Below, in pieces: positions 37,210 through 62,611 of a stretch of DNA of 64,000 bases. This stretch comes from Octopus sinensis (taxonomy: Eukaryota). A program made the translations under genes and the position numbers. The stretch lies in contig NW_021832610.1 of assembly GCF_006345805.1 (NCBI RefSeq), positions 39,891 to 103,890 of the forward strand, read 5' to 3'. The notes below the pieces were generated by a model, which saw only the letters and a list, made by a program, of their open reading frames with translations, was not told the origin of the DNA and searched no databases. Every line of letters starts with the position of its first letter. The stretch's first letter is position 1.

Positions 37210-38440
37210 CTAAAAGCTTTTGTATTCTGAAACAGAGAAAAAAAAAAGAACAAAAAAACGAAAGCAGAAAGCAGGAAGTAGACACCAATTTTCATTATTT
37301 AAACACCTTTTTACTTCAATAATTCAAATATTCAAGATACCACGATGATAAAAGTAAGTAATTTGTAATTTCTCAATCGTTTTATTTTAGTGATTTGAAA
37401 AACCTGGTCTTCCTTTTTATTTTGTATATAAATTATGCAGAAATTGCTCGAATTTTACAACTAGGAAATGAAAATAGGAAATGTCTTTTAATTCATTCAG
37501 TGTTCTGGCTTTTACGACTATTTTTCTTACATTTATGTTATTTATTAACAATTAAGCGGTGACATAGAGGAATTAAGTGGAGTGCAGCATAGTATTTAAA
37601 AGTACATAGTTTAAAGTGAGATTACTTATTTGTTATCAAATAACAAACTATTGACAAGTTACTTATCGTCAGTTTGAAAAATTCTAGTTTTACAAGTTAA
37701 TCGTAATCGAACAGACCTATGATCAAAGCTATTCCAATTGGATCAGTATTATTTTCTGTTTCTTTTCTTTTCACCTGACCAGGTGAGAGTGTCATCTAAG
37801 GGTCATTTGCCGCGACAGTAACTTAGTGTTACGTAGGCAATATGTGTTTCTTGTGGGGTCCTGCGGTAGCAAACGGAAGGGCCGTCCCGAGCGCCTACTC
37901 GTTTTTCCCCGCCTCGTAACAGGAAAATGGATACTTTTTAACGAAATTTTCAGATGCCGTAGATTCCATGTATGTTGGGTAAAAATTTCCGAGGGGGTAG
38001 CGAGAGGAGTTTTGGGAAATTTATACCAACCCACTGGTTTTCCTCATAACTTTCAGAAAAATGGATAGGAGTGGGACAAGATCAGGTGTTTTTTATACTG
38101 CATTTTTGACTTAGTAAAAAATCATTTTTTCATTACCTTACAAAAACTACATCAACTAAGTAAATGGCCTTCCCTAAATATATTAAAAGCATCATAACCT
38201 AATCTGGTCACTGTTTCAGAAAATTATCGCCGACCTTTGAGTATATAAAAGAAATTTGGCAGGGGTAAAATTAGTTAGATAAGGTAAGGTAAATTATCCT
38301 CCTCCCCCTCCTCCCTCCCCTCATCATCCCCTCCCCATCCCCCTCCCCCTCCCCATCTCCTCCTCCTCCCGCCCCTCCTCCTCTTGTAAACATAAATTTT
38401 TCCTATGTATAGAGACTTTTGAATCACCCTGTATGTAATA

Positions 38441-39890: not shown

Positions 39891-40015
39891 CAGCCCAAAT
39901 TACTACCCATTACAATTTGGATTTTACTCTGTAATACAATAATTTCTGCTTCTCAAACATGGTGAGTAGTTACTGTTATTATTATTATTACTATTATTAT
40001 TATTGTTATTATTAA

Positions 40016-41023: not shown

Positions 41024-41942
41024 GTGGATTTAGTCAGCATATATATACTTCATGAAATGGCTGACCAGTTCCCAGACATCTGTAGAGGTCTATATCGTGA
41101 TGATTGTTTGCTTTACCTCCAAAACATTTCCAATCAAAAAATACAGAAGGTTAAGAATAGGTTAGTTAGGTTTGTTCATAGAATGGGCTTTCACATCGTT
41201 TTTGACGATGAGATAACTGAAGCTAACTTCTTAGATATTACTCTTAATTTGCATAATAACTCATACTTCCCATACCACAAACCTTCCACCAATCTCAAGT
41301 ATATTAATCCATCCAGTAATCATACTAGGGCAATTACTAAGAATTTAGTTAAAAACATTTCAGTTAGATTGTCTGAACTGTCCGCCAATGTTGACATTTT
41401 TAATGACAATGCAGAATTTTCTAACTCTGCCTTAGTTAAAGCAGGGTATAAAGAAAAGTTACATACATTGATTCTGCTCAATCTCATCCTTCATCTACTA
41501 TTCGAAACAAGAAATCTAGTTTTAATAAGAAGAGTGATTTTAATTCTAATATTGACAACAGCACAAAACATGATAAAATTCCTTTACAGAGTAAGGGAGG
41601 CAACCGTTATCTAAGCCCATTTTTTCACTCTAGAGGCAATTCACCGTTCTTTATAGATAGTACTACTTATAAATTGACTGTTACTGGCAAAAGTATTTGG
41701 TTTGTTATTCTATATGGAAGGCAAATTAAATCTAATCTTCCTTTGCAATTCCTTGAAGTGGTTGGTAAGAACTTTCCAAAAAATTCTAGATATCATCCAA
41801 TTATTAATTCTCATATAGTTAGAGTTGCTTTCTCCAACACAAAGAATCTTTCACAAATTATATCTTCTCATAATACCAGTCTGCTAAATAAAAGTTCATT
41901 TTCTGAGAGTTCCAACATTAATTTTGTTAATACCAGCCCTTC

Positions 41943-41986
<44 letters not shown>

Positions 41987-42430
41987 GTAATAATAACATA
42001 GTTTTGGTCTCTGAGGACAACCCCAAAAGAATTAAATTTATTTCTAATAATTCTAAGATTAAGAATTCTATATACCAATGTAAAATTTCTTGCGGTACCG
42101 ATGTCTACTTCTGCATTGGTACCTCCTCTTCCCAATTATCTAAGAGAATTTCCAATCATTATTCTTCATTTAGGGATAGCAGTAAATGTTATAGCACAGG
42201 GCTAAGTAAATTGGTTTGGTAACTTAAAGACAACAATAAGGATTTTAAGTTAGATTGGTTCATCCTGTCCATATCTTTTCCTTACGATAAGGGCAAAGGA
42301 TTTTGTAACATTTTCAACTCTGAACTCTTCCATATTCTCTTCCCTAAGAATCATCTTGTTAACACACTTATAGAGCGATCTTACAGATGTAAGCACTGGC
42401 AGAAACATACCTTTAGCTCATATAAGTGAT
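41024..42430 (+). pseudogene. 5'-truncated Penelope-like element: RT plus GIY-YIG endonuclease, disrupted
   Basis: GLYRDDCL...NFLDITLNL...PYHKP...YINPSSNH (RT). SIYQCKISCG...CIGTS...KRISNHYSSFR...TGLSKLVW (GIY-YIG). An (AAT)n expansion lies inside. Confidence 0.88.
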
Positions 42431-45710: not shown

Positions 45711-45859
45711 GACTTATGTAGACAAGCTTGGTCATGTTGAATACTGTTGTATTTGCCACAAAGATTTTGAGAGGACTGACGTAATACATGAATGTTACTT
45801 AAAAAATAAAAATGATGCTCGTCTACCATTTTGCAATTGCTATAAAGGCATATTTCCAG
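45711..45859 (+). CDS. Candidate exon A of a cysteine-rich host gene (TYVDKLGHVEYCCICHKDFERTDVIHECYLKNKNDARLPFCNCYKGIFP)
   Basis: Acceptor ttttcttatattacag| with an upstream ttaac; donor ccag|gtatgt; phase-1 exit. An alternative start is the ATG at 45655 or the acceptor at 45651. Confidence 0.55.
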
Positions 45860-47180
45860 GTATGTATAATGTTTGTTTAGCGTTTTAACATCCTGCTATG
45901 AAAGGATTCTGACCACCCTCCAGTGACCAAGGGTGGACTGACTCATTATTATAAAATGAAGAACAGTGAGTGATTGGCAGTTCATGTTGGTAAGCAGTTC
46001 ACTGTGAGTCTGTTGATATAGAGTGTTGAATTTTGTGTAAAGCAATAATTATGCATCATGTGTACACTTTTCTTCCCTCTTGATTCGCTATATATCTAAT
46101 ACAAAGATATAAAACATCCTGAGCTGCTCTATGTTTCTTTCACAAGTGTGTAATTTTTTCATTATTTCGAGTCGGTCTGGTCATCCCATAGATGTTCTCT
46201 TATTAGCTTGAGTTAGTTGTTGTTCATTAGTCTCGAGTCGCTTGATTTTGTTACAGTTCTTAAGGCTGTGATCACTGTGTTCAGATTTATTCATTTCAGT
46301 ATGTACCTAGAACTACATTATTCAGTTTAACCCTTTCGTTACTATATTTCTGACCAAAATACACCCCTTTTGTGTTTCAATTAATTTCTAACATAATCAT
46401 AAATTTAGTCTGGTTTCATTAAACAACTATAACTTTTTTATTTATCAATATTTAAATATGAATTTCAATGCAAATATTGTTAGTATGTTCATGAAAACAC
46501 ATGGTTTTACTATGAAAACAATTGAATTACACTGTCCTATATTATATTATGAAATATTTGAACTCTGCTAATTTTTGAAGATGTTTTCCATTTCTTTTTC
46601 TACTTCTGTTTTTTGAAAATTTTCATTATGAATGAAAGGTAGATACTAGTTTCATGTTATCAAGCAGTAAATTTGAATTCAAAATATTTTTGAAAGAAGA
46701 TATAGAAAAATTTAGCAAAATAAGGATCATATATTTCTTTTCCCAAATGAGAGAGAATTCTAATAACAGTTCCAATAATGATAAAAAAATGAATTTGTAC
46801 CTGAATGCAGTAAGAATTTAAAAGCTGTTTTTCTTAGTTATTTTTAGGAGTAGACTAGACCTAGCCACAATCGTTCTAAAGAAACAAAATTGTTAGAATT
46901 TAAAATTTTTTTTCCTTTGAAATGAATCATTATGCAGAATGTAAACAAAAAGGGAAAAAAGTTTCTGATCCCTTACATGTTTAGAAGAAATCTGAGCATC
47001 TTTAAGGAATATCGTGTGTGTATGTGTGTAATTTGATTAGAAATATTTTTTCAAATTTACCTTGTTTTTATTTTTCTATTTACCTATAGTTTTAATTTAC
47101 TGAAAAGGTATGTGCCAAATTTTGATGAATTTTTATTGTGAATCATTATTATATGTGTTTTATGTGTTTCTGCTCATTTA

Positions 47181-48346
47181 CGAGGTGGTGTCAAAAGATT
47201 CCAGGACTAGTTATGTTTAATAATAAAAAATAACTTATTTAACTATGTTTTAACATCATCTCTTTCGAAATAGTCACCTTGCACAGCAATACACTGGTCC
47301 CAGCATTTCTGCCACTTGTGGAATCCATCGTGGAAGTCGTTTTTTGTAAGCAATTCAAGGACCTCCTGTGATTCACTCTGGATCTTGACAACAGCATTAA
47401 AACAGTGACCTCTGAGCTGCATTTTCATCTTGGGGAAGAGATATAAGTCCACAGGTTCTAAATCTGGTGAATAGAACAGGCCCAGAAGTGATACCATGTT
47501 TTTTTTGGTGAAAAATTCATGAGTGAGGAGAGTTTGGTGACAGGGTGCATTGTTGTTATGAAAAATCCGATTCTTTGCGCCCCACAGATCCAGTTGCTTT
47601 TGTTGAATGTCCTTCTTCAAACACTTCAAAACGTTGCATAGAATTCTCAATTGATGATCTGACCCTGAGGGATGAATTTTCAATGCACAATACCACAGTT
47701 CTTGGGGTGATGTTTGTGGTAGGTTTTCTAAATAAATGTGCTGTTTTAAAGCCTAGCCAGGATCATGGGCCTGGTTTCTTGGTTTCTATGGTGTATGTGT
47801 TCCCCAGCTGGGTGGGACACCAGTCCATTGCAGCGTTACTCATTTTTGCCAGCTGAGTGGACTGGAGCAACATGAAATGAAGTGCTTTGCTCAAGAATAC
47901 AATGCGTCGCCTGGTCCAGGAATTGAAACCACAATCTTACGATCATGGTGCTGACGCCCTAACCACTAAGCCATGCACTTCCATGGTAGGTCTTCTAGAG
48001 TGCTTATTGTCTTCCAGTGGATGTTCTTCTGCTTTTGAAGCACCCATACTTCTTGAAATGTTGCATACAACCCAATGCATGCTCAGTCCTTCTGTAGTAG
48101 GGTTTACCAAGTTTGACACAAAGTTTCACGTTGGCCCTTTGTTCCTGTCCAGGACAAAATCACAGACTACAGAATATGTGTGCTCACAAAAACACAAATT
48201 TCACAACTTGTGAACTAAACACAGTGATATCATTTGGCACACTATGGCTTGAAAGTCACTGCTAGCTCTCACTGTGCTCACAACTATGTGCTGCCATCTG
48301 TTAGTGCATGATAGAACTAGTCTGGAAACTTTTTGATACCACCTCA
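47181..48346 (-). mobile_element. Defective mariner element with nested SINE
   Basis: TIRs cgaggtggtgtcaaaagattccaggactag / ctagtctggaaactttttgataccacctca. ORF 47243-47683 reads HNNNAPCH...YSPDLEPVDLYLFPKMK...GDYFE. Confidence 0.85.
47750..47982 (-). mobile_element. tRNA-headed CORE-like SINE inserted in the mariner
   Basis: The - strand reads ggaagtgcatggcttagtggttagggcgtc...ttcaattcctgg...ttcttgagcaaagcacttc. Confidence 0.65.
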
Positions 48347-49056
48347 CACGCATGTGTGCTTATTTCGTTTAGTTGATAATATTTGTGTGTTTCATTTTCT
48401 TGTTTTGTTCAAAGATAAATACCAATGGTATAAACTTGTCTTATGTGCATTAAATCCACCTGATAGATTATCCAATAATTTCCACAATTCTTTATATTAG
48501 CATTTTGTTGTATGCCCAGTTGACTATTAACTAATAAGTAATTTTCTATGGTGATGTTTAAATAAACTTTAAATAAGTTTATATTTTGTTGAATTTACCT
48601 ACAATCAGATTCACTTTGAGTAAGTATCAATATAGAGTGCTGTAGAAGTGAGACAAAAACAGTTTGACCACACAAAAACACACTTTTCATGTCAAAATAC
48701 ACTTTTTCCATTGAAAATTATGCATCAGTTGAAAATTCTGGTTGTGAACTTTTTTTTTACATAGTTTTGATCAAAATCTGACACTTTTCATGCCAGAATC
48801 TCTCAATCACCATGGTATTTCCACGTATTGAAGTCCGTTCCTGCTAAGCCGATTTAGCCTCTTTCATCTTTCCTTGGTGTACCTCTTCTAATTTACTAAA
48901 GGCACTCTAAGGCTTTTGTAATACTGTTGTATTACGATAGCATAGGCTTACGTGTACTTCTCATACTGACTTACTTGAAGACACTGTTCTACTGCATGGG
49001 CTTTAGCTACTATGGTCTGTGCTTAGCAGGGTCCCTTGACTTCTTTAAAAAAATAA

Positions 49057-49290
49057 GGCGGCGAGCTGGCAGAAACGTTAGCACGCCGGGCGAAATGCTT
49101 AGCGGTATTTCGTCTGCATTACGTTGTGAGTTCAAATTCCGCCGAGGTCGACTTTGCCTTTCATCCTTTCGGGGTCGATAAATTAAGTACCAGTTACGCA
49201 CTGGGGTCGATGTAATCGACTTAATACCTATGTCTGTCCTTGTTTGTCCCCTCTGTGTTTAGCCCCTTGTGGGTAATAACGAAATAGGTA
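49057..49290 (+). mobile_element. SINE family S1
   Basis: Complete, little-diverged copy. Confidence 0.8.
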
Positions 49291-51899
49291 TTTCCACGTA
49301 TTCACAAAGTTCATCCTTTTTTCTTTTATTTATTTCTGACTGCTGAACAGTAGCTCTTGTTCTAGTTCAATGCACAGGAATGCTATAACTTGATTTGTGT
49401 TGAAAATCATAGTTGTGAAAAGGACTTCGCTTTGCTTTATTTTGCTATAAAAATTAGTATGGGTAGGTTAGAAAATCATTATGAAATATATAAGTGAAAA
49501 TTTTATCATTAATTTTCACTAAGAAAAGAACATATTTTCTTCAAGATTTTTATATCACAAGAAAGAAAAATTTCTCATGAATTCTATATGCTCTTTGCTG
49601 AATCCAGCCATAATTTAGTGAAAAAGTGCAAAAGTCAATAAGGAAGATGGTATACTGATGCTAATTGTCAAACTGACATATTCCCACACAGCGAGAGGTC
49701 AAATGGAAAATGAATCCAGGGCTTCAAATATAGAATTTGAGCTGGAAATTTCAAGAAATGGACGAATCAATTATGAAATAAACATATTTGCACAAAATTC
49801 GCACTAAATTGAGCTACCTAAGTCTTCTAGATCCCCAAATTAGAATAGACTCATTGCACTGAGAATCTTCATTTCCTTTTGTTGTTTTAACAAAATATGG
49901 ACAATGGCATCTCAATTTTACCTAGTACATGCACATGTAAATTTTGCTTTTCTTTGCAAAATATTGGTCAAATTGTACCAATAAAAATTATATTGTGCAA
50001 GGAATATCATGTTGTTGACTATTAAATTCAGATGTGAAGATTTTAAATATAGTTGGACAATTTTTGGTAGTGTTTACAAATTCGTTTTGATTTTTCTCCC
50101 TCTCTCCTAATGAGTTTGCTGTAAGTTACATGGTTTTAATGTCTTTAATTTATGTTTTGAATGCTAAAAGCAAGGATTTAGTTTCACATTTTGTTTGTTT
50201 TTCAGGTGGTCGTGGGATGTGCTAGTAAAAACAACTAAATCTCCCTTAAATCACACACTTTTTCATTTGAAAATATAAAAAAAAATTTTTTAATTAAAAA
50301 GGCTTCAGCTATTGTTTTTAAGTTTGTAGTGCAAAATCAGTTCATATTGAGGTGGGTGGAGAGGGGAAGTGGAGGGAAATCATAAATTTTCAAAATTTTT
50401 TTTTAATAAAAAGTTTCCCCACCATCATTTCAAAAGCTGTGATGGAAAAAAAAATGGAAAAATCCCTGACAAAATGGAGAAATTCCAACTTATGTGGGTG
50501 TCTTGATCTGAAATTCTGCTGTTTATATCCACTTTTAATAGTCCATTAAAATTTTATTGAGATGGTGTCGTGTCTCAAAATCTCAGGATTTATTTAGCTT
50601 TATCTCTACTATCAACATGCCAAAACTCAGTCTCTGTAGCTTGTACTTTTACATTTAGCTAGGTCTGAAAACTCCATGAAACTGACTGTTAGTTACATAT
50701 AACAAATTAGTGTTTACATAAATAGGGTCTGAAAATTCCACGAAACTGACTGTTAATTACATATAACAAATTAGTTGCTTGACTTTAATCAGTTGAGCAT
50801 GTCTCTTAATGGCCAAACTATATGTGCATCTTTGATCGTACATCACTGATCATGAGCAGAAGTAGTTGGGGAGCATCATAGCCATGTGTTGAGAAGAATT
50901 CTTTGTTTTGAATAATTCACCTTTGGAAACACGGGTGTTTCTTTCAACATCCTTAAATAACCCTTATTCAGGGACCTTTTGAGTGGGATGGGCTACTCGA
51001 CCTGAAGAAAATTCTAACTGGGCCCCCACCTGCAAGGTCATGCATTGTTTATCTTGATATGAGATCACCATGTCACGCACATATTTTGTGATGCATGTGC
51101 CTGGTGTACCCTTATCAGACGGGTAGTCATGATGAGTATACTGGGCTCTGTATATTTTACCCCAGTGACACTTCAATAGTATGAAAAAAAAATCTTGGTA
51201 TAAAAGATAGTCTACAGCAAATATTCTGCTCAATACCACAGATTTGCTAGTCAGTTGCTTAACCTTAGCCAGTTGAGCATGTCCCTTGGTGGCTGACAAT
51301 ATGTGCATCTCTGATCAAGAATGGAAGTAGTTGGGGAGCATTATAGCCATGTATTGAGAGGAATCCTTTGGGGTTTGAATAATTCACCTCTGGAAACAGG
51401 GGTGTTTCATTCAACAACCTTAAACAACCCTTATTCAGGGATGTTACGCCAACCACTTTTCTGAGTGAACTGGATGCTTCTAACATTATACCAGTACCAG
51501 TAAGGTCACCAAGTAACTTGCAACTTGCAAGACAAAGATCCTTTGAGAGGAGGAGGACTGTATTGAAGGAGGTGGCTTTGTGCTGTGTGAAGAGAGGTTA
51601 GCATATGACAGATGGACAGAAACAAGTGGAATTCCAACCATGTTTTGTGGTTCATTACCTCAACAACTCCTTTATAGGATCTAGTGGCTAAAGACATCAT
51701 CAGGTGGAACCACGTCTGGTTTTGGCCCCTACTTGTTTACCGTTTTTGATATGGTGGGCCCTCATCTTTTGGAGATGTCTGCAGCTCTGGTGTCAAGTGT
51801 GTTTTTTCCTTTCTCCTTTTTTCTTTTGTTCTTTGGTTTCTTCAATGCAGCATCAATGAATGTCAGCGGGCGAATGACCATCCTGCCAAATTTCCCTTT

Positions 51900-52962
51900 A
51901 AATACTCACTAGTAGGCTCCTTGCCTTTGTGAGGCCCAATGCTTGAAAGGTGCTTTTATGTCCCACCAGCACAGGTTCCATTTGCATGGCCCTGGTATAT
52001 GCCACAAGGCGGCAAGCTGGTAGAAACGGTAGCATGCCGGGCAAAATGCTTAGCAGTATTTCGTCTGTCTTTACATTCTGAGTTCAAATTCTGCTGAGGT
52101 CGACCTTGTCTTTTATCCTTTCGGGGTCGATAAATTAAGTACCAGTTACACACTGGTGTCGATATAATCGACTTAATCCGTTTGTCTGTCCTTGTTTGTT
52201 CCCTCTGTGTTTAGCCCCTTGTGGGTAGTAAAAAAATAGGTATGTGCCACAAATGTGATTTTACTTGGCTTGTTGAATCTTCTCAAGCACAACATAATGC
52301 CAAAGGTCTTATCATTGTCTCTGTGAGACCCAACATTCGAAAGGACCTCAACCACTTTGCCTCCGTGAGGCTCAATGCTTGAAAGGTACTTTTTATGTGC
52401 CACCTGCATGGGTGCAGGTTACATGATACCAGCATCAGTCACAACTGCGATTTCACTTGGTTTGATCGGTCTTCTCAAGCACAACTTATCGCCAAAGGTC
52501 TTGGTCTCTAGTCATTGTCTCAGTGAGGACCAAAGTTCACAGATCATGATTCACCACCTCATCCCAAGTCTTCCTGAGGCTACCTCTACCACAGGTTTGC
52601 TCCATAGTTAGGTTACGGCACTCCTTTACACAGCTGTCCTCAGCCATATGCATCCCATGACCATACCAGCACATTTGTCTCTCCTGCACACCACATATGA
52701 TGCTTCTCATGCCTCACATTCTTTCAACATGCTTACACTCTGTCGAACATGTACAGTGACACTGCACATCCAGCTTTCTATGTACCCACTACACTCACGG
52801 AGTGGTTGGCGCTAGGAAGGGCATCCAGCTGTAGAAACACTGCCAGATCAGACTGGAGCCTGGTGCAGCCTCCTGACTTCCTAGACCCCTGTCGAACTGT
52901 CCAACCCATGCCAATATGGAAAACGGACGTTAAACGATGATGAGGATGATGATGATGATGAT
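51900..52962. mobile_element. RTE LINE insertion: inverted 5' part (51900-52745, -) plus sense tail (52780-52962, +), with an S1 SINE nested at 52008-52242
   Basis: - strand 52520-52745 translates CWYGHGMHMAEDSCVKECRN...CGRGSLRKTWDEVVNHDL. The + tail ends in (gat)n. Confidence 0.6.
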
Positions 52963-53280
52963 GTATATATTGAGAAAAATGGTAATCAGAATTTTGGAGA
53001 ATTCTTTTTATTTATTCATTATTATTAGCGCCCCCCCCCCCAACAAAAACAATGTTCTCCTCTTCTAAACAAAACCCCCCAAAAACATCTGTTTTATATA
53101 AATGAACAAGATGTTTGTACATTCACAAAATTCTATTTGACAAGTTCAAGAAATGAATGAAAGCACTAATAATAATGAAGAAATGAAAAAATTTTTTTCC
53201 AAAATTCTGGCACCCCTTTTTTCTCAATATTCAATATCTGTACACCACACCTAACACTCTGTACATACATACATACATAC

Positions 53281-53335
<55 letters not shown>

Positions 53336-53347
53336 ATATATATATAG

Positions 53348-53382
<35 letters not shown>

Positions 53383-53390
53383 TGTATATA

Positions 53391-53426
<36 letters not shown>

Positions 53427-53635
53427 GTACTAATACATACTAGTACATACTAATACTTACACCAACCCTATACATACACACGTCCAGACCCCGCATACGC
53501 ACTTATACTCTCTCACACACACACACACATACCTATACATACCAATACGTACTAATACATACTAATACATACTAATACATACACCAACCCCATACATACG
53601 CACGTCCAGACCAATCTTACGCACTAATACTCTCT

Positions 53636-53678
<43 letters not shown>

Positions 53679-53920
53679 ATACATACTAATACATACTAAT
53701 ACATACACCAACCCTATACATACACACATCCAGACCCCTCCCACGCACTTTTAGCTGGTCCCTCAACCCTTTATCAACCCTATTATCTCCCCTTATTTCG
53801 CTCTCGCGTCTCATGTTTGATCTTTGACCTCTGGCCGAAATCAGATCGCCATGTTGATTCGTTAGCTACTGCACGCATTTTTTTTCTCTCCTTCTTTCTG
53901 TGTTTTTCTCTCTCTGTGTA

Positions 53921-53958
53921 TCTTTCTGTTGAAGAGCGTAGGCTCGAAACGTTAAAGA
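53921..53958 (+). ncRNA. Minimal hammerhead-like motif, second copy of the 21743 family, with A6->U in the core
   Basis: tcttt-CTGTTGA-a-gagc(gtag)gctc-GAA-ACGT-T-aaaga. Perfect 5-bp stem I. Confidence 0.5.
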
Positions 53959-54075
53959 CTTGTTTTATTTATATTTCCTGAGCGCCATACTAATACAATT
54001 GTTCGTTTGTTTTCCACCTGCCTTCGTCTTTGTTTATTTTCATAAAGCTTCCCGTTATATATATATATATTATAT

Positions 54076-54129
<54 letters not shown>

Positions 54130-54151
54130 ATATATATTATATATATAATAT

Positions 54152-54194
<43 letters not shown>

Positions 54195-54247
54195 GTATAT
54201 ATATATGTATATAATATATATATATATGTATATATATGTATATAATA

Positions 54248-54308
<61 letters not shown>

Positions 54309-54360
54309 TATATATATATATACACACACACATACATACACATGTATATTTTTGTTTCAG

Positions 54361-54507
54361 CGTGTCCAAAAAATACAACTATTTGCAACAGAGAAGTAAC
54401 ATGCCCTGAAAGACGTTTGTATAAAGAATGTAAAGTGTCTCATCTGAAGAATAACAAATTGGTATGCAATGACAGTCTAGAATGGGAACCAAAATTTACA
54501 TGTCCAG
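54361..54507 (+). CDS. Exon B: 147-bp phase 1-1 exon encoding a six-Cys module ([48 protein letters not shown])
   Basis: Acceptor tttttgtttcag|, donor ccag|gtaaaa, open frame, and paralogy with exon C. Confidence 0.8.
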
Positions 54508-54698
54508 GTAAAAGAAATCTCAATACATAATTACAATTGTTGTTGTTATTAATCTTTGCAATTTATTCTTGTTATTCTTTTTTGTCATTTTATAATATTG
54601 GAGATATTACATAAGTGGAAAACATAGGGAAGTGATCTACCTGTTACATTGTACACTGTCATAGGTAGTCTTGAAGTTCATTGCATTCCAGTCTAGGC

Positions 54699-55349
54699 CA
54701 GGGGTTCTCAACCAGAGCCCATATGGCCTTTGGGGGTTCGATGACTAGCGTCAGTGCTAGTAGGGTGCCAAGAGTACCATCCGAGCAAGATCGTTGCCAG
54801 AGCAGCCAACTGGCTTCTGTGCCAGTGGCATGTAAAAGGGCACCATTCGAGCATGATCATTACTAACGTCGCCTTACTGGCACCTGTGCTGGTGGCATGT
54901 GTAAAAGGATTTGAGCGAGGTCATTGCCAGTACCGCCTGACTGGCCCCCATGCTGGTGGCACGTAAAAAGCACCCACTATGCTCTTGGAGTGGTTGGCAT
55001 TAGGAAGGGCATCCAGATGTAGAAACTCTGCCAAATCAAGATTGGAGCATGGTGCAGCCATCCGGTTCGCCAGCTCTCAGTTAAAATTGTCCAACCCATG
55101 CTAGCATGGAAAGCGGACGTTAAACGATGATGATGATGATGATGATGATGATGTATCAGATTTGTAGTAATAAAATCGATTATACTTCTTTAGTAGACAA
55201 AATATTTTAATAATTTTTTTAATACAATTCCTAATAATATTTAATTATAAAAATATAAGATATTTTTAAACATTGAATGACTGATTGTTCACTCCAGTAA
55301 AATAGGAATTAAAGGGATCCTTAGACAAAAAAATGGTTGAACACATCTT
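54699..55349 (+). mobile_element. hAT (Charlie-like) MITE with a nested RTE 3' copy at 54770-55153
   Basis: Left TIR caggggttctcaacc, degenerate right TIR ggttgaacacatctt, 8-bp TSD gtctaggc/gtctagac. An interior segment recurs at 63945-64000. Confidence 0.65.
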
Positions 55350-55477
55350 GTCTAGACCATGAACAAACATTTTGTTCATTTCTTCTGCAGTCCATACTTT
55401 AACACTTTACATAATACTGGAGGCATGACTGTGTAGTAAGAAGTTGCTTCTTAATCACATGGTTCCAAGTTCCATTG

Positions 55478-55590
55478 GTGGAGGCACATGGCCTAGTGGT
55501 TAGAGCAGCGGACTCACGGTTGTGGGATCACGGGTTCGAATCTCAGACCGGGCGATGTGTGTGTTTATGAGTGAAACACCTAAGCTCCAT
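55478..55590 (+). mobile_element. SINE family S3 head
   Basis: ggaggcacatggcctagtggttagagcagcggactc...gttcgaatc. Confidence 0.7.
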
Positions 55591-55908
55591 GTATTTGTGC
55601 GTGTATTTCTGTCTCTTTGTGTGTGCACGTTTGAGTGTTTTTGTGTTTAGGTTTGTGTCACTATGTATGTGTGTCTGTTATGTATGGATGTGTGTCTCCA
55701 CAAGTGTCCTTGTGTGAAGTGTGTGTATGTATATGGTCATGTGTTTCAGTTTTCATTTGTGTATGCCAGTATGTATTTATATATGTGTGTATGCAAGTGC
55801 ATGTGCTTGTCTGTTCAGAAGTCTTACCATCTGTCTGTCCGTATTACCTATTCACCAATCTATCTATATGTATCTCTCTATATATATTGATCCATTTACC
55901 TACATATG

Positions 55909-55924
<16 letters not shown>

Positions 55925-55939
<15 letters not shown>

Positions 55940-56793
55940 TATGCCTTGAGAGAAAAGTTGGACCTAAGAAGTATCAGATGTGGTGTGCAAGAGAGACAAC
56001 TGTGCTGGTATGGTCATATGGTGAGAATGGATGTGGATAGCTGTGTGAAAAAGTACCACACCCTAGCAGTTGAGGGAACCTGTGGAAGAGGTAGACCCAG
56101 GAAGACCTGGGATGTGGTGGTGAAGCATGACCTTCAAACATTGGGCCTCACCGAGGCAATGACTAGTGACTGGGACCTCTGGAAATATTCTGTGCTTGAG
56201 AAGACTTGGCAAGTGCAAGTGAGACCATAACCTTGTGGCCTATGCCAGGGGTGTAACCAGTCCACATATGCGTGCCTTTCCTTCATTGGACACTAAACTC
56301 TGCTTGCGAAGACCAGTTGAGGCAAGTGAAATTGAAGTCAGAATCAAACTCAATTGCGAAGACCTGTTGAGGCACGTGAAATCGAAGTCAAACTCGGTGA
56401 CTGGCATCCGTTGCTAGTGGAGCGCTATGCCGATGGCATGATAAATACACCAATCAAGCATTATCGTTACCTACGTTGCCTTACTAGCACTTGTGCTGGT
56501 GGCACGTAAAAAAACATTCGAGCGAGGTCATTGCCAGTGCTGCTGGACTGGCTCCTGTGCAGGTGGCACATAAAAAGCACCATTAGAGCGTGGCTGTTGC
56601 CAGTACCACCAAACTGGCCCTCATGCCGGTGGCACGTAAAAGTACCCACTACACTCTCGGAGTGGTTGGCGTTAGGAAGGTCATTCAGCTGTAGAAACTC
56701 TGCCAGGTCAGATTGGAGTCTGGTTTGCCAGACCTCAGTCAAATCCTCCAACCCATGCTAGCATGGAAAGCGGACGTTAAACGATGATGATGA
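55925..56793 (+). mobile_element. RTE LINE 3' end: ORF C-terminus, long 3' UTR and (GAT)n tail
   Basis: ORF 55946-56230 reads RQLCWYGHMVRM...VEGTCGRGRPRKTWDVVVKHDL. Confidence 0.82.
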
Positions 56794-56829
56794 TATCTAT
56801 CTATCTCTCTCTATATATATATATATGTG

Positions 56830-56861
<32 letters not shown>

Positions 56862-57821
56862 CAGTCATACACACACACACACATATATATATATACCTAC
56901 ATATATATACACATACACACATGTGTGTGTATGTGTATATATGTAGGTATATATATATATATATATAAAGATAGATAAGTGCATAGGTAATATGGACAGA
57001 GAGACGGACAGATGTATGGACAGAAAGGCACATGCATGCGCATACACATGTACATACATACATGCATACATGCATACACAAATGAAAACTGAAACACATG
57101 ACTATGTACACACACAAACACTTCACACAAGGGCACATATAGAGACACACATCCGTACATAACAGATGCACATACATAGTCACACTCATTCATACACAAA
57201 AACATTCAAACATGTACACAAAGATACACATACACACATGCATACAAACACAAACATGAATACAAACTCACACACACACACACACACACACAAACACATA
57301 CACACACAAACACATGAATGTGCAAATAAATACATACATACAAATGTGCACACCTGCAAACATATATATATATATATGGTTAGACACACACACACACACA
57401 CACACATGTGTGTGCATACACACACATACATACATGCATACATGCACACATAGATATGTATGTGTGCATGGACACTGATGCACAGACATGCACACAAACA
57501 AACAAAAAGAACGCAACTCCAATAATGTACAGAGTCAATGACTATTGAAAAAGGTTGCATGACGCAATGAAAATTTTAGTAAAAATAAGTAAGCAAATGA
57601 GTAGAAATCGAACCAGTGTGTGTGTTATATAATAAGGCACTAAAAATAAATGACTCTTCTCAGACACAATAAGATATTCATATAAATGTATGTATGTATG
57701 TAACGTATGTATGTATTTAAGTATGTATGAATGAATGCATGCTTGTATATGAACGTGTGTGCATATATTTCCTAATTGATGTCAGCTATTTATACTAAAT
57801 GAATTTTTTCCACCCCTGCAG

Positions 57822-57968
57822 AGTGTAACAAAATTACTATCTACTGCAACAGAAAAATATACTGTAGTGAAACAATCATTGGCAGTGAGTGTATGTTACC
57901 ATTTAACACTTCTCAGAAATTAATATGTGGTGATGATCAACAATGGAAAACTGACTTTAAATGTCCAG
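57822..57968 (+). CDS. Exon C: 147-bp phase 1-1 exon encoding a six-Cys module (CNKITIYCNRKIYCSETIIGSECMLPFNTSQKLICGDDQQWKTDFKCP); absent from the ORF track
   Basis: Acceptor ttttttccacccctgcag|, donor ccag|gtaata. Same length and same Cys and Trp positions as exon B. Confidence 0.8.
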
Positions 57969-58050
57969 GTAATAATTTTATTGTGTAGAATTGGTTTTTT
58001 ATTTATTTGATTGTTTTAATGGAATATGTCTCTATTGAAATAACTGATAA

Positions 58051-59099
58051 CACAATGTAACACATGTTTTGTTTATTTGTATTTTTTTATGTTCATATAT
58101 GCATTTTTTGCCACTAAATTTAAAAATCACATTCGTTTTGACGTAACATCGATAGTTATTTATTTATTCCTAATTTCATATTTGCTCATTATATTTGTCA
58201 CTTTTTTCTACGGCACTTTTTTGGTTCAATCTATTCTAGTATTGTAAGGATAATTACACAACATTTAGTACTTTTTCATACATCGAAAAGTATTTAGGAA
58301 GTATATAGTACAAAACGAAACAATAAAACTCTGCGCTGTAAATGCCTTGATAACTCTTTTCTTAACATGAGAAGTGCTTTGACAATCGAGATTTTCTGGA
58401 GTGTACACCTTCATCTCTTCTGACTACAGACCATTTATAATCTCCCATCAAAGCAGTATCCCATCGTCCTTGGTATCTTCTTTCCATAGTTTCGATGTCC
58501 TGATGAAATCTCTCAACATGATCCTCACTTCGTGGCGTTTCCAGTACACAGATGTCTTGCAGTCTTCCCCCAGTAGATTCCATTCCTTCAACCTTAATGA
58601 AAGAAGTTCAGCTCCTGACTTAGTAAGACCCAGATCCCTGATTAAATCATCTAGCTCACTCTGAATTGGAATGTGAGGCTCTGAAGTCGTTCTTGGTATG
58701 AAAGCTTCCTCCATTTCTTGGCTGCTGCTACTTGTTGACTCTTCAGATGAAATATTTCCTGGTGGTAGTGGTACTGTCATCATGTGGAGCAGGTGCTCTA
58801 GATGATGATATGTCTGGACACTGAAGAGCTTGTCTTCCTTTCACTTTTCTGCACTTTGTCACTTCAATCATACAAAAGTAACAGTCATCGTGATGGTTCT
58901 TTGGCTCTCTCCATACCCTTGGAATGGCAAAAGGCATTGACCTTTCTGTACCTCTTAACCATCCTTCTAGAGTAGATCGACAGCTTCCACATATCACATG
59001 TGGGGCCCATGGTTTGTCATGGTCACCCATGGGCACTCTGAAATAGTCTGTACGCTATCCACAATAAACAAATTTTTTTTTGAAAATTGTTACGTTGTG
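58051..59099 (-). mobile_element. Internally deleted Chapaev3-like (CMC) DNA transposon
   Basis: CAC...GTG ends (cacaatgtaaca / tgttacgttgtg). Peptides GDHDKPWAPHVIC...WREPKNHHDDCYFC, QSELDDLIRDLGLTK...LKEWNLL and ERFHQDIETMERRYQGRWD. The family name comes from motif recall. Confidence 0.65.
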
Positions 59100-59111
59100 A
59101 AATTAAGTGAA

Positions 59112-59217
59112 AATTGATCTTTGGCAATACATATACTAAAATTGGAATGAAACAGAGAAGATTAGCATGGCCCCTGCGCAAGAATGACACGCAAATTCAT
59201 GAAGCGTTCCATATTTT
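59112..59217 (+). pseudogene. U6: U6 snRNA retrocopy/pseudogene
   Basis: acatatactaaaattggaatgaaacagagaagattagcatggcccctgcgcaagaatgacacgcaaattcatgaagcgttccatatttt matches the conserved U6 body with about four substitutions, two of them CpG-type. The ACAGAGA box is intact. Confidence 0.92.
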
Positions 59218-59224
59218 CTGTAGG

Positions 59225-59613
59225 CGTAGGATTGGCTGTGTGGTAAGTAGCTTGCTTGCGAACCACATGGTTCAGGGTTCAGTCCCACTGCATGGCACCT
59301 TGGACAAGTGCCTTCTACTATAGCCTCTGGCCGACCAAAGCCTTGTGATTGGATTTGGTAGACAGAAACTGAAAGAAACCCGTCGTATATATGTATATGT
59401 GCGTGTATGTTTGTGTGTCTGTGTTTGTCCTGCCTACATTGCTTGGCAACCGATGCTGGAGTGTTTACACTCTCGTAACTTAGCAGATCGGCAAAAAAGA
59501 GACCGATAGAATAAGTACTTGGCATACAAAGAATAAGTCCTGGGGTTGATTTGCTCGACTAATGGTGGTGCTCCAGCATGGCCACAGTCAAATGACTGAA
59601 ACAAGTAAAAGAG
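59225..59613 (+). mobile_element. SINE family S2, directly after U6
   Basis: Full-length S2 sequence. Confidence 0.8.
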
Positions 59614-59989
59614 TAATCAAATCTAAGTTTTTTTTAAAAATTTGCCTGATGACACCACATCTTTTCATTAATTCTCTTTTTTCTTTCTTTTCTATCTGTC
59701 TTGTCTGTTTTATTATTTTTTTTTTTTGGGGGGGGGGGCACTTTCTATATTTCTGCTGTGGTATATGATTATATATGTATATAATACAAGTATATATAAC
59801 CTATGTGGGAGGAAATATCTTGCTTGAAAACAGGAAGGTCTAGCAGTTACAAAAAATTGCTTCAACAAATTCTGCTTGACACATGAAAAAGTGGATGCTA
59901 AAAGTTTTTTTAAACATTGGTTTAGTTTTGTTTTTTGGGCTAAATTTAGCAATTATTTTGTCTTTTATTTTCTGGAACTGCTTGATGTA

Positions 59990-60660
59990 TTGTTGAACAA
60001 TCAGTGTCATTGGAGAGCATGTAGGTTTGTGTTGTAGTTGCGAATAATTTAGCTGACATGGAGAACTGGAAGTCATCTCCAGAATGTGCCTGAGACATGT
60101 CTGATGAACGCGTTGAAGGAGCCTCACATGACGTTTGTAAAGGGCCCATGTCTCACATGAGTAAAGGAGCGATGTTAGTATACATGCAGAGTACACAGTA
60201 ATTTTTGTTTGCCTGATGATGCCATGCAGGGACCAGACATGAGACTGAAGAGACCAGAATGAATTAATTGTTCTCTGCAGCCTGAAAGATATTTCATCAT
60301 CCAGGGAGCAAGAACGGCTGAGTGTGCTGTCCAAGTAGACAAACTTGTCTACCACCTTCAGAATTGTTCCTTCAACCAAGATTGCTGGTTCCACATATGG
60401 ATTTCCTGGTGCAGGCTGGAACATTACAACAGTTGTGTCCAGGCTAATGCCGAGTCCAAATACCTTGCAAGAAGCAGAAATATGATTCATGAGTATTTGC
60501 ATGTCATCCACTGTATGAATGACTAAGTCACAGTCATCTGCATAAAGGAGGTCATGAATGATAGACTAGAAAACTTTTGAAATCCTGGCTGGAGAGGGTT
60601 GAAGTTGGTGGACAATATGTATAGCAACAGCATTTGTCCCCAGACAAGGGAAGAAGTTAT
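59990..60660 (-). pseudogene. RTE/BovB-like LINE reverse transcriptase fragment
   Basis: LLYADDCDL (~60540) leads into ORF 59840-60511: ISLDTTVVM...VDKFVYLDSTLS...LLYSCETW...HQTCLRHIL. Confidence 0.85.
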
Positions 60661-60699
60661 TGTTGTTGAAGAATTTCTATGACTACACCAACTCTAAAT

Positions 60700-61025
60700 T
60701 TTAGTACCTTAACTCCTCAAATTATAGACTTATAAATTACTATGTATGGGGCACAAATAAAGGCACAAGCTGCTCTGCCTGCAACACCAAGATCAAGGAG
60801 GTGTTCAAAGATCTTCGAAGGGACAGAGTGAGGAATGTATGTGTCAGGTTCCAGAGTGTCTCGAGGCCATGGTTTACATTGAGGGCAGCTACTTTTAGCA
60901 AACTTTTATCTCCCATCCATAATCTAGTTGATATCTTTTGATTTGTAAAAATAATTTTACTCATGGAAGGGATATTGTGATTCCTTTTCCCTTTATGTAA
61001 ATTCAAATTTAGCTGATCACACATA
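60700..61025 (+). pseudogene. Tc1/mariner (maT-like) transposase C-terminal fragment
   Basis: YYVWG...CNTKIKEVFKDLRRDRVRNVCVRFQS, then after a frameshift LEAMVYIEGSYF*. Confidence 0.6.
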
Positions 61026-61239
61026 TACATATATATGCATATATATATATATACTTTCAGCAAATACAATTAAGATTCAAGTGAATTCCAATGAATTCAA
61101 ATGAATATGGTACTTAACTTAGATGCACCAGAATTGTTTATGGTATTAACCATAAAAAATGTGGGGTGATTATAACCAAGAAAAAAGCAACAAGAATGGA
61201 TTAGTAGTTGCTTTTTTTCTTGGTTATATCTATATATAT

Positions 61240-61480
61240 CATCATCATCATCATCATCGTTTAACGTCCGTTTTCCGCGCTAGCACGGGTTGGACGGTTT
61301 CGACCGGGGTCTGGGGAGCTCGGGACTGCCCCAGGCTCCAGTCTAGTCTGGCAGTGTTTCTACAGCTGGATGCCCTTCCTAACGCCAACCACTCCGCGAG
61401 TGTAGTGGGTGTTTTTTTACGTGCCACCTGCACAGTGCCAGAGGGGTCTGGCATCGGCCACGTTCGGATGGTGCTTTTTA
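61240..61480 (-). mobile_element. RTE 3' UTR copy
   Basis: Reverse complement of the shared RTE tail, with a (cat)n run. A + strand partial copy lies at 62600-62722. Confidence 0.75.
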
Positions 61481-61778
61481 TGGGGGGGAGCAGAAATATA
61501 GGGAGCACCAGTGGGAGGGGTGGTTCAGAGGAAGGTTCTAGGCAAGTAGAACGTAGGATATCAAGAGAGGGGTAATGCATGGTGAAATAGCGTATTGAAG
61601 AGGGGGGTTCAAAGAGTAGACACCTATAATGGTGGTGGAGGGAGAAACGACATCCGGTATAGTTGGAGCAAAATAGAGATATCCGGTATTGGTGGTGGAG
61701 GTGGGTAGGGCGGGCGCGCCGCCCGCGAAGAATCGGCGGCCAATTCTATCAGCCCTGTAAGGGAGATAGATCTTAAAT

Positions 61779-61812
<34 letters not shown>

Positions 61813-61821
61813 ATATATATT

Positions 61822-62288
61822 ATACAAGATAAGAAAATGGAGAAACACATCTAAATCAAATATCAATTACCAGATAATACTCAATCACATACTTTATTAA
61901 ACCACCACATAAGAGACTGTAGGGTTAAATATAAAAAGCAGAACAAATCAGTGTACATAAAGGAATGTACATAAAAAAGTGTACATAAAAGAGTAATGTT
62001 GTATAATAATTAGAATATATATAAAAAAGAATATAAGATCTAATGTATGCTTATATTTATATTTACTTGTATTTATATTCTTTTTTATATATATTCTACT
62101 TATTATACAACATTATTCTTTTATGTACACTTTTTTCATGTACATTCCTTTATGTACACTGATTTGTTCTGCTTTTTATATTTAACCCTACAGTCTCTTA
62201 TGTGGTGGTTTAATAAAGTATGTGATTGAGTATTATCTGGTAATTGATATTTAATGTAGATGTGTTTCTCCATTTTCTTATCTTGTAT
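61822..62288. repeat. Long palindrome: ~215-bp arms, ~36-bp spacer
   Basis: 61822-62036 is nearly the reverse complement of 62073-62288. Each arm contains a triplicated tgtacataaa subrepeat. Confidence 0.92.
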
Positions 62289-62542
62289 TAGTAATTTGTG
62301 GTAAATCATTTTACCTTTGCCCATATAATACAGTAAATGAATTGATTGCATCGCAGTCATTAACATTTATGTATTAACTTTGTTGGGTACTTCACTAGCA
62401 GTATTTGGATATACGTTATCCCATAGAGGGTTGCATTTACAACCCCTATCTCAATTTGTATATATACATATACGTATACATACATACAAATATATATATA
62501 TACATATATATATATACATACGTATTATATGTATGTATATAT

Positions 62543-62611
<69 letters not shown>

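What the first reader, a model, noticed from the sequence alone, without database searches (positions are those of the whole stretch)
45711..57968. Hidden modular cysteine-rich gene with duplicated 147-bp symmetric exons encoding an unassigned six-Cys domain
Seen: exons at 54361-54507 and 57822-57968 are both exactly 147 bp and phase 1-1, with canonical AG/GT sites. Both encode C-x6-C-x5-C-x8-C-x11-C-x5-W-x5-CP, while most other residues differ, which is the pattern expected of purifying selection on a disulfide scaffold after exon duplication. An upstream exon (45711-45859) has a different six-Cys pattern (CC-x-C-x12-C-x12-C-x-C) and exits in phase 1, so it can splice to them. Known: phase 1-1 Cys modules are typical of shuffled extracellular domains. 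The C...W-x5-C ending recalls sushi/CCP domains, but these modules are shorter and have six Cys; exon A loosely recalls a TNFR Cys-rich domain. Inferred: an extracellular or receptor protein built from a possibly lineage-specific repeat module, continuing beyond the window.
Basis: partly seen in the sequence, partly recalled or inferred. Interest (0 to 1): 0.75.

Follow-up and report, generated by a model that had tools for sequence, protein, structure and literature searches.

The report
Cephalopod-only six-cysteine repeat membrane protein gene
The three exons are real and form the front half of an already annotated but uncharacterised Octopus sinensis gene, one of a cephalopod-only family of cell-surface proteins built from a 48-residue six-cysteine module that matches no known domain; the finding is solid but of moderate interest.

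Summary
The window is the last 64 kb of Octopus sinensis contig VCDQ01002432.1.

Two upstream exons (37345-37353, 39894-39961) add the start codon and a signal peptide.

An exhaustive HMMER scan of 1.84 billion representative proteins found ten real relatives, all cephalopod or unnamed sequencing-run fragments (Octopus, Argonauta, Acanthosepion). Fuller relatives read: signal peptide, A domain, 1-4 B modules, transmembrane helix, low-complexity tail.

The O. bimaculoides ortholog (A0A0L8H5C1, 394 aa, 85.5% identical) has four modules and a transmembrane segment. Its modules 3 and 4 match orphan exons just after an assembly gap on O. sinensis chromosome CM016871.1, annotated there as "ribosome-binding protein 1-like".

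The module has no Pfam or PDB sequence match. AlphaFold models it confidently (pLDDT 87.7) as a five-strand mini-domain, and Foldseek finds no match with E below 1. Sushi and TNFR membership tests failed.

Verdict: a real, lineage-restricted, undescribed Cys-rich module family. Function is unknown; a surface receptor or adhesion role is inferred.

The parts
37345..37353 (+). Coding start of LOC115229376: ATG ATA AAA (M-I-K), followed by donor GTAAGT
   Evidence: The CDS start of the recorded gene in L001 maps to window 37345 (offset 27344). The sequence reads ATGATAAAA|gtaagt. The O. bimaculoides ortholog also starts MIKPK.
39894..39961 (+). Exon 2 (68 bp): signal-peptide exon PKLLPITIWILLCNTIISASQT plus the first two bases of the Trp codon. 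Phase 0 in, phase 2 out.
   Evidence: tblastn of P0001 residues 4-26; AG acceptor and GTGAGT donor. That it acts as a signal peptide is inferred from the hydrophobic core and the ISA/SQ site.
45711..45859 (+). Exon 3 (149 bp): 'A' domain, CC-x-C-x12-C-x12-C-x-C. Phase 2 in, phase 1 out.
   Evidence: 100% match to P0001 residues 27-75. The domain is conserved in 7 family members, with 4 invariant Cys. It has no Pfam or PDB sequence match and is unrelated to the B module by hhalign.
54361..54507 (+). Exon 4 (147 bp, phase 1-1): six-Cys module B
   Evidence: It is 84% identical to module 1 of ortholog P0018. The AlphaFold2 model of this module has pLDDT 87.7.
54508..54615 (+). Read-through frame past the exon-B donor: GKRNLNT*LQLLLLLIFAIYSCYSFLSFYNIGDIT*. 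It is a stop-interrupted counterpart of a hydrophobic C-terminal tail that is open in O. bimaculoides P0004 and in the unnamed sequencing-run fragment P0009.
   Evidence: One search compared with the sequences. Frame, length and final stop are the same. It may be a remnant alternative terminal exon or merely neutral intron similarity; this is unresolved.
57822..57968 (+). Exon 5 (147 bp, phase 1-1): six-Cys module C, with donor CCAG|GTAATAAT
   Evidence: It is 95.8% nt identical to exon C' on chromosome CM016871.1 (L002 9930-10076), while the intron flanks are only 82-89% identical.
57969..57988 (+). Six read-through codons and the stop (GNNFIV*) that end the RefSeq model. This is probably intron in the full-length transcript.
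   Evidence: The P0001 C-terminus maps here. The identical donor and read-through sequence at L002 C' is treated as a splice donor in model XP_036364299.1.

Best explanation
The finding is the 5' half of a real protein-coding gene of Octopus sinensis, LOC115229376. In the window it comprises a start-codon exon, a signal-peptide exon, an 'A' Cys-rich domain exon, and two 48-residue six-Cys 'B-type' module exons of 147 bp, both phase 1-1.

It belongs to a family seen only in coleoid cephalopods. The fuller members are single-pass type I membrane glycoproteins with this layout: signal peptide, one A domain, one to four B modules, a transmembrane helix, and a low-complexity acidic cytoplasmic tail.

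The module number grew by duplication of the symmetric exon, and neighbouring copies are homogenised within species. The O. sinensis gene is most likely cut in two by the assembly. Its remaining modules (C', D) and tail lie just after an N gap on chromosome CM016871.1, where they are annotated as 'ribosome-binding protein 1-like'.

Shown: exon structure, identity to the RefSeq protein, family membership, phyletic range, homolog architecture, and lack of any match to known domains.

Inferred: the ectodomain is a disulfide-stabilised, glycosylated stalk of small beta modules that binds an unknown ligand or partner at the cell surface (a receptor or adhesion role). Short secreted isoforms could arise by reading through module-exon donors.
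For: - The window is collinear with O. sinensis contig VCDQ01002432.1.
- The concatenated exons are 100% identical to XP_029655600.1.
- All splice sites are canonical, and the 147-bp phase 1-1 exon recurs in two other loci.
- HMMER against 1.84e9 representatives gave 11 hits at E<=1e-3: the query itself, nine further cephalopod or unnamed sequencing-run proteins, and one repetitive, bacterial-looking protein judged spurious on sequence.
- P0003, P0005, P0007, P0010 and P0018 carry a hydrophobic segment after the last module, followed by a tail.
- Ortholog P0018 is 148/173 identical and collinear over SP-A-B-C. It then continues with two more modules that best match L002 exons C' (84%) and D (79%).
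- L002 has an N gap at 8991-9090 and no SP, A or B exon in the 9 kb upstream of it.
- C and C' are paralogous rather than allelic. The exons are 95.8% identical, the flanks 82-89%, and similarity ends about 130 bp upstream and 80 bp downstream.
- 17 of 18 modules carry N-x-S/T sequons.
- The module model is confident and all-beta.
Against: - No transcript evidence could be examined here.
- The RefSeq model ends 6 codons after exon C, so a 179-aa secreted product is possible.
- The TM exon of the O. sinensis gene was not located in L002.
- The TM segment of P0018 contains a run of nine Ile that might be translated microsatellite.
- Placing the unplaced contig in the gap is an inference from complementary content, not from overlapping sequence.
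- dN/dS between copies is 0.5-1.2 on very few sites. Apart from the Cys, Trp and a few other residues the sequence is weakly constrained, and function is unknown.
Confidence: 0.75

Rival explanations
1. The gene is complete within the window. It encodes a small secreted 179-aa Cys-rich protein (SP-A-B-C-GNNFIV), as in the RefSeq model. The chromosome copy (C'-D-tail) is a separate, 5'-truncated paralog.
For: - RefSeq XP_029655600.1 ends at 57988.
- No further module or TM-like homologous exon lies in 57989-64000.
- Other models in the family also end by read-through: P0004 and the C-terminus of P0018.
Against: - The contig ends 6 kb after exon C, whereas introns here are 2.5-8.5 kb.
- The ortholog has SP-A-B-C-C'-D-TM in one protein.
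- L002 C'-D lacks its own 5' exons and sits 840 bp after an assembly gap.
- The same donor is treated as a splice site at C' in the RefSeq model there.
Confidence: 0.15
2. The B module is a divergent, shortened sushi/CCP (complement control protein) domain with an extra disulfide.
For: - It has a C-x5-W-x5-C(P) ending and often starts CP.
- CD55 and C1r CCP modules appear among weak Foldseek hits.
Against: - No Sushi hit in Pfam, even at E<=10, for 18 modules or for full-length members scanned at E<=1 to 10.
- hhalign against a Pfam-validated sushi alignment gives probability 0.3% over 13 columns.
- Foldseek probability for CCP chains is <=0.08 and TMq 0.25-0.47.
- The four invariant Cys are C1, C2, C5 and C6. 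C3 and C4 are lost together in the second module of P0005 and P0014. That does not fit the mapping in which C4 corresponds to sushi Cys2.
Confidence: 0.1
3. The protein is a TNF-receptor-superfamily member whose A and B units are TNFR cysteine-rich domains.
For: - UniProt names ortholog A0A0L8H5C1 'TNFR-Cys domain-containing protein'. That this is an automatic name from a PROSITE profile is my own knowledge; the matched region is unknown.
- It has six Cys per unit of roughly 48 residues and a type I membrane architecture.
Against: - No Pfam TNFR_c6 match at E<=10.
- The recalled PROSITE PS00652 pattern matches no family member.
- The Cys spacing lacks the C-x(0,2)-C-x(2,3)-C core.
- No TNFR chain is among the 40 Foldseek hits.
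- No death domain or other known domain is found in the tails.
Confidence: 0.08
4. It is not a functional gene: chance ORFs, a transposon fragment or a pseudogene.
For: The introns are packed with repeats and transposon-like ORFs. A stop interrupts the read-through tail after exon B.
Against: - Open frames, splice sites and Cys positions are conserved between O. sinensis and O. bimaculoides at 85.5% aa identity.
- They are also conserved in Argonauta and Acanthosepion relatives.
- The exon is more conserved than its flanks.
- There is no match of these exons elsewhere in the window.
Confidence: 0.02

Closest known systems
Uncharacterised cephalopod proteins of the same family: O. bimaculoides A0A0L8H5C1 (ortholog) and XP_052828472.1; O. 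vulgaris CAI9732128-131; O. sinensis XP_036364299.1 and XP_036364319.1; Argonauta hians GAB1601604 and GAB1601623; Acanthosepion pharaonis CAE1153323
   Same: They share the A domain, the B module with the same Cys/Trp spacing, and the signal peptide. The 147-bp phase 1-1 exons were seen in the O. sinensis and O. bimaculoides loci examined.
   Different: Module number varies from 1 to 4. Tails are unrelated low-complexity sequences. Several models are truncated or fused. None has a described function.
Sushi / CCP / SCR domain (Pfam PF00084)
   Same: Both are small all-beta extracellular modules, often encoded by phase 1-1 exons, with a Trp about 5 residues before the last Cys and a frequent 'CP' start.
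   Different: The module has 48 residues and six Cys, against about 60 residues and four Cys. There is no HMM, profile-profile or significant fold match. The Cys co-loss pattern is incompatible with the sushi mapping.
TNFR cysteine-rich domain (Pfam PF00020, PROSITE PS50050)
   Same: Both are six-Cys repeats in the ectodomain of a type I membrane protein. UniProt's automatic name for the ortholog points this way.
   Different: The Cys spacing differs. There is no Pfam hit, no match to the recalled PROSITE pattern, and no TNFR structure among the Foldseek hits.
Pacifastin-type and fibronectin type I mini-domains (best Foldseek neighbours)
   Same: All are small disulfide-braced beta-hairpin domains. 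TM-scores are 0.4-0.58 over about 31 residues.
   Different: E-values are 1.7 or worse and probabilities <=0.3. The Cys patterns and lengths differ. This is a generic small-beta resemblance only.

Membership tests
Sushi/CCP (PF00084) | Match to the Pfam Sushi HMM | tested here: not met
   There was no Sushi hit at E<=10 for the window peptides, 18 modules and P0018, or at E<=1 for 7 full-length members. Control sushi domains scored E 1e-8 to 1e-11.
Sushi/CCP (PF00084) | Four conserved Cys (1-3, 2-4) in about 60 residues | tested here: not met
   The module has six Cys in 48 residues. The invariant Cys are C1, C2, C5 and C6. C3 and C4 are absent together in the second module of P0005 and P0014. 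Disulfide connectivity itself was not measured.
Sushi/CCP (PF00084) | Invariant Trp between the last two Cys | tested here: met
   Trp is invariant in 18 of 18 modules, five residues before the last Cys.
Sushi/CCP (PF00084) | Profile-profile or fold similarity to CCP modules | tested here: not met
   hhalign gives probability 0.3% and E 0.18 over 13 columns. Foldseek CCP hits have E 5.6-9.3 and probability <=0.08.
TNFR Cys-rich domain (PF00020 / PS00652 / PS50050) | Match to Pfam TNFR_c6 | tested here: not met
   No hit at E<=10 for P0001 exons or P0018, and none at E<=1 for 7 other members.
The pattern was recalled from memory, so this is a lead-level test.
TNFR Cys-rich domain (PF00020 / PS50050) | PROSITE profile PS50050 score | not testable with these tools
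   Only the UniProt name 'TNFR-Cys domain-containing protein' for A0A0L8H5C1 points to it. The region and score are unknown.
Cephalopod A-domain/B-module family (unnamed) | N-terminal signal peptide and A domain with 4 invariant Cys | tested here: met
   Window exons 39894-39961 and 45711-45859; alignment A6.
Cephalopod A-domain/B-module family (unnamed) | One or more B modules C-x6-C-x5-C-x8-C-x11-C-x5-W-x5-C on 147-bp phase 1-1 exons | tested here: met
   There are two in the window. The same exon size and phase occur in L002 and L003.
Cephalopod A-domain/B-module family (unnamed) | Transmembrane helix and cytoplasmic tail after the last module | tested here: inconclusive
   These are present in ortholog P0018 and in paralogs P0003, P0005, P0007 and P0010. 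They were not found in the window or located in L002.

The most novel reading that the evidence does not exclude
The 48-residue B module (and perhaps the A domain) is a genuinely new disulfide-rich fold that arose in the coleoid cephalopod lineage. It would define a fast-evolving, exon-duplicating family of neuronal or immune surface receptors. One member may be the 'previously unidentified gene with a TNFR domain' that marks a class of immature optic-lobe neurons in O. bimaculoides (PMC9815951).
Probability: 0.15. Interest if true: 0.6.

Novelty: new variant of a known kind. Interest (0 to 1): 0.4.

Why it matters
Lineage-restricted surface-protein families are candidates for cephalopod-specific biology such as neural wiring, chemotactile sensing, immunity or reproduction. 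This one has no domain annotation anywhere.

Defining the module as a Pfam-style family would give meaningful labels to at least a dozen 'uncharacterized', 'hypothetical' or misnamed models. Its features are six Cys, an invariant Trp, a 147-bp phase 1-1 exon and a confident AlphaFold model.

The work also exposes an assembly and annotation error: one gene is split into LOC115229376 and a 'ribosome-binding protein 1-like' model. It is also a clean case of exon duplication with within-species homogenisation.

It does not open a long-standing question. Cys-rich, exon-shuffled ectodomain repeats are a familiar theme.

Tried and rejected
- Pfam scans of the exons, 18 modules and the full-length relatives returned nothing relevant. 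The only recurring hit was CIMIP3 (26.6 bits against a cut-off of 27 in P0018, summed over three repeats of a 23-residue stretch). I rejected it because CIMIP3 is an intracellular ciliary protein, the match is partial, and it is below threshold.
- PDB sequence searches with the whole-protein, module and A-domain profiles found nothing or only zinc-finger/cytochrome CxxC noise at E>0.3.
- AlphaFold2 of the whole protein with a 2-sequence alignment was unusable (pLDDT 35.8).
- Foldseek of the good module model against PDB and BFVD gave no hit with E<1.
- A word-indexed search with the module profile returned nothing, and the search with the ectodomain profile added only unnamed fragments.
- The A domain is not a diverged B module by hhalign.
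- No further module, TM-like homologous exon or second family gene lies in the window.
- The TM exon in L002 was not found by similarity or hydropathy scan, because AT-rich DNA gives too many false positives.
- Literature searches for the locus and accession identifiers found nothing.
- The optic-lobe 'tnfr' marker obimac0032150 could not be mapped to this family.
- The allelic-haplotig explanation for exon C versus C' was rejected on the 82-89% flank identity and the short extent of similarity.

Full report
**1. Observation**

The three segments are exactly as described.
- 54361-54507 and 57822-57968 are each 147 bp, and 45711-45859 is 149 bp. Each is preceded by AG and followed by GT.
- In the only open frame the two 147-bp segments are phase 1-1. 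They encode 48-residue peptides with the spacing C-x6-C-x5-C-x8-C-x11-C-x5-W-x5-CP.
- The 149-bp segment encodes CC-x-C-x12-C-x12-C-x-C and exits in phase 1. It enters in phase 2, with one base completing a Trp codon.

The similarity is not chance.
- The strict Cys/Trp pattern, and a loosened version, occur only at these two places in all six frames of the window.
- BLASTP of the two peptides gives E = 9e-15.
- The 12 of 42 non-Cys identities were reached by none of 100,000 permutations.
- At the DNA level the exons are 56% identical with no codon-position bias, so the B/C duplication is old.

**2. Identity of the locus**

The window is collinear, base for base at the nine probes tested, with the last 64 kb of Octopus sinensis contig VCDQ01002432.1 of assembly GCA_006345805.1.

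The concatenated A+B+C peptide is 100% identical over its full length to RefSeq XP_029655600.1, 'uncharacterized protein LOC115229376', 179 aa.

Two further coding exons lie upstream:
- 37345-37353 (ATG ATA AAA, then GTAAGT);
- 39894-39961, which encodes the hydrophobic leader PKLLPITIWILLCNTIISASQT(W).

The model ends by reading six codons past the exon-C donor (GNNFIV*, to 57988).

**3. The family**

A full HMMER scan of 1.84 billion representative proteins, using a profile of the O. sinensis protein and its first homolog, gave 11 hits at E<=1e-3. One is the query itself. One is a 1235-aa repetitive protein that I judged bacterial and spurious from its sequence alone; it was not looked up. 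The other nine are from Octopus vulgaris, O. bimaculoides, O. sinensis, Argonauta hians and Acanthosepion pharaonis, or are unnamed sequencing-run fragments. No non-cephalopod relative was seen. The caveat is that the profile was built from only two sequences.

The fuller members share one architecture: signal peptide, one A domain, one to three B modules, a hydrophobic segment of about 20 residues, and a low-complexity, often repetitive, acidic tail. These are P0003, P0005, P0007 and P0010. The four O. vulgaris accessions are consecutive (CAI9732128-131), which suggests a tandem cluster; I did not check this at the DNA level.

In 18 aligned modules C1, C2, C5, C6 and the Trp are invariant. 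C3 is present in 17 and C4 in 16. C3 and C4 are missing together in the second module of P0005 and P0014, which suggests they pair with each other. That is an inference.

Seventeen of 18 modules carry N-x-S/T sequons, which fits an ectodomain. In the A domain four Cys are invariant.

**4. The gene most likely continues beyond the window**

The 90% cluster of P0001 also contains P0018, O. bimaculoides A0A0L8H5C1, 394 aa. It is 148/173 identical and collinear with P0001 over SP-A-B-C. It then continues with two more C-type modules, a hydrophobic segment (AILGYIFPPIIIIIIIIIAVVIY) and a tail of about 100 residues.

On O. sinensis chromosome CM016871.1 (locus L002) the following are found:
- an N gap at 8991-9090;
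- a complete 147-bp C-type exon, C', 840 bp later at 9930-10076;
- a module-D exon at 12414-12593.

C' is 84% and 81% identical to P0018 modules 2 and 3, and D is 79% identical to module 4. RefSeq starts a model there at an internal Met of C' and calls it 'ribosome-binding protein 1-like' (P0008). No SP, A or B exon lies in the 9 kb before the gap.

C and C' are not alleles. The exons are 95.8% identical, but the flanks are only 82% (upstream) and 89% (downstream), and similarity stops after about 130 and 80 bp.

The window (SP-A-B-C, then 6 kb to the contig end) and L002 (gap, then C'-D-tail) are thus complementary halves of what is one gene in O. bimaculoides. This is a strong inference, not a demonstration.
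- There is no overlapping unique sequence.
- I could not locate a TM exon in L002.
- The end of P0018's tail (…EQSTEQKNINQEGMYSS) resembles the repeated tail exons of P0008 plus donor read-through (…EQSTQQPNQGGMYSA).

**5. Evolutionary dynamics**

All module exons examined are 147 bp and phase 1-1 with a CCAG|GT donor. This is the classic substrate for exon duplication.

Module identities show within-species homogenisation:
- O. sinensis C versus C': 44/48;
- O. bimaculoides modules 2 versus 3: 46/48;
- all four cross-species pairs: 40/48.

This means either gene conversion or independent duplication.

Nei-Gojobori estimates rest on 48-49 codons and are rough:

| Comparison | omega |
|---|---|
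| B vs C | 0.49 (dS saturated) |
| B vs paralogous O. bimaculoides modules | 0.72-0.84 |
| A domains | 0.59 |
| C vs C' | about 1.0 (1 synonymous, 5 non-synonymous differences) |

Cys and Trp never change. The exon is more conserved than its flanks. The picture is a rigid scaffold with fast-evolving surface residues.

**6. What the module is**

- No member of the family hits any Pfam model above threshold.
- Profiles of the whole protein, the module and the A domain find nothing meaningful among PDB sequences.
- With a 17-module alignment AlphaFold2 gives a confident model (mean pLDDT 87.7, pTM 0.63) of five short strands.
- Foldseek finds no match with E below 1 in PDB or BFVD. The weak neighbours are pacifastin-type inhibitors, VWF and MUC2 assemblies, fibronectin type I modules, and CD55 and C1r CCP modules, all with probability <=0.3.

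Two of them were confirmed as Sushi by Pfam at E 1e-8 to 1e-11. hhalign against the module profile gives probability 0.3%, aligning only the C-x5-W stretch. The Cys co-loss pattern also conflicts with the sushi mapping.

*TNFR test.* UniProt's name for the ortholog ('TNFR-Cys domain-containing protein') is, to my knowledge, an automatic PROSITE-profile name. Pfam TNFR_c6 does not match, and the PS00652 pattern as I recall it matches no member. No TNFR chain appears among the Foldseek hits.

The A and B units are unrelated to each other by hhalign. The module is therefore best described as an undescribed small disulfide-rich beta domain.

**7. Mechanism (inferred)**

- The leader directs the protein into the secretory pathway.
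- The A domain and the string of rigid, glycosylated six-Cys modules project from the membrane.
- The single TM helix and the disordered acidic tail anchor it and could recruit cytoplasmic partners.
- Variation in module number and rapid surface evolution suggest recognition of a variable ligand or partner, that is, a receptor or adhesion role.
- Read-through of module-exon donors could give truncated secreted forms.

Nothing here identifies the ligand or the tissue. One lead could not be mapped: an O. bimaculoides 'previously unidentified gene with a TNFR domain' (obimac0032150) marks a class of immature optic-lobe neurons (PMC9815951).

**8. Verdict**

The novelty is more modest than proposed.
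- The gene is already modelled, though truncated and uncharacterised.
- Lineage-specific Cys-rich repeat ectodomains encoded by 1-1 exons are a well-known kind.
- What is new is the module family itself and the recognition that two O. sinensis models are one gene.

Interest is 0.4.

Noticed in passing
window 1-17394: There is a 17.4-kb strongly T-rich satellite (AT skew about -0.63, GC about 23%). Its period is 18, 20 or 38 bp, with about 918 copies of TTTGTTCTATTTTTAGTT-like units. It accounts for the window's T excess (41% T against 26% A).
   Followed up: partly
window 17394-18768: Minisatellites lie next to the satellite: a 9-bp unit TCTGGAATG (about 76 copies), a 183-bp unit and a 22-bp unit. 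Translated, they give spurious Cys-rich 'CLECQEC' ORFs that produce weak tblastn noise against the Cys-rich query.
   Followed up: partly
window 54508-54615; L003 26785-26890: The frame continuing past the exon-B donor has the same length, frame and final stop as a hydrophobic tail (GKRNLNALSLFLLVLSLLFFLVILFLSLYNVGRIT) that is open in O. bimaculoides A0A0L8GVR5 and in an unnamed sequencing-run fragment. The window copy has TAA at the position where those two read Leu. It may be a decayed alternative membrane-anchoring terminal exon, or only neutral intron similarity at dS of about 0.3.
   Followed up: partly
L002 8991-12593 (O. sinensis CM016871.1, about 56.96 Mb, reversed): RefSeq XP_036364299.1, 'ribosome-binding protein 1-like', starts at an internal Met inside a six-Cys module exon just after an N gap. 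It looks like the 3' half of LOC115229376, named for its repetitive tail.
   Followed up: yes
window 61822-62060 (-) and 62073-62608 (+): Two adjacent segments in inverted orientation both match L002 9091-9663, the sequence immediately after the chromosome's N gap, at 95% and 91%. This could be a repeat or foldback near the contig end, or a trace of the true join.
   Followed up: partly
window 57824-57967 vs L002 9932-10075 and P0018 modules 2 and 3: Neighbouring C-type modules are more alike within each species (44/48 and 46/48) than between species (40/48). This indicates gene conversion or parallel exon duplication.
   Followed up: partly
window 43.5, 52.7, 56.5 and 61.3 kb; 47246-47752 (-); 59843-60565 (-); 41452-42219 (+): The introns and flanks carry several copies of a repeat whose translation contains PTTLSEWLALGRASSCRNTARSDW. 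They also hold longer ORFs that I took, by eye only, for transposase- or reverse-transcriptase-like. None reached a Pfam threshold.
   Followed up: partly
L003 31347-31396 (O. bimaculoides LOC106874402): The last exon of the paralog encodes only VVYWILKRRKSGQCL. This looks like the end of a TM helix plus a stop-transfer signal, so a TM-start exon is probably missing from that 187-aa model. Its likely O. vulgaris counterpart, P0003, has three modules, a full TM and a tail.
   Followed up: partly
P0006 (Argonauta hians GAB1601604, 576 aa): This is a family member in which SP-A-B is followed by several hydrophobic segments rather than one. It may be a fused gene model or a multi-pass variant.
   Followed up: no
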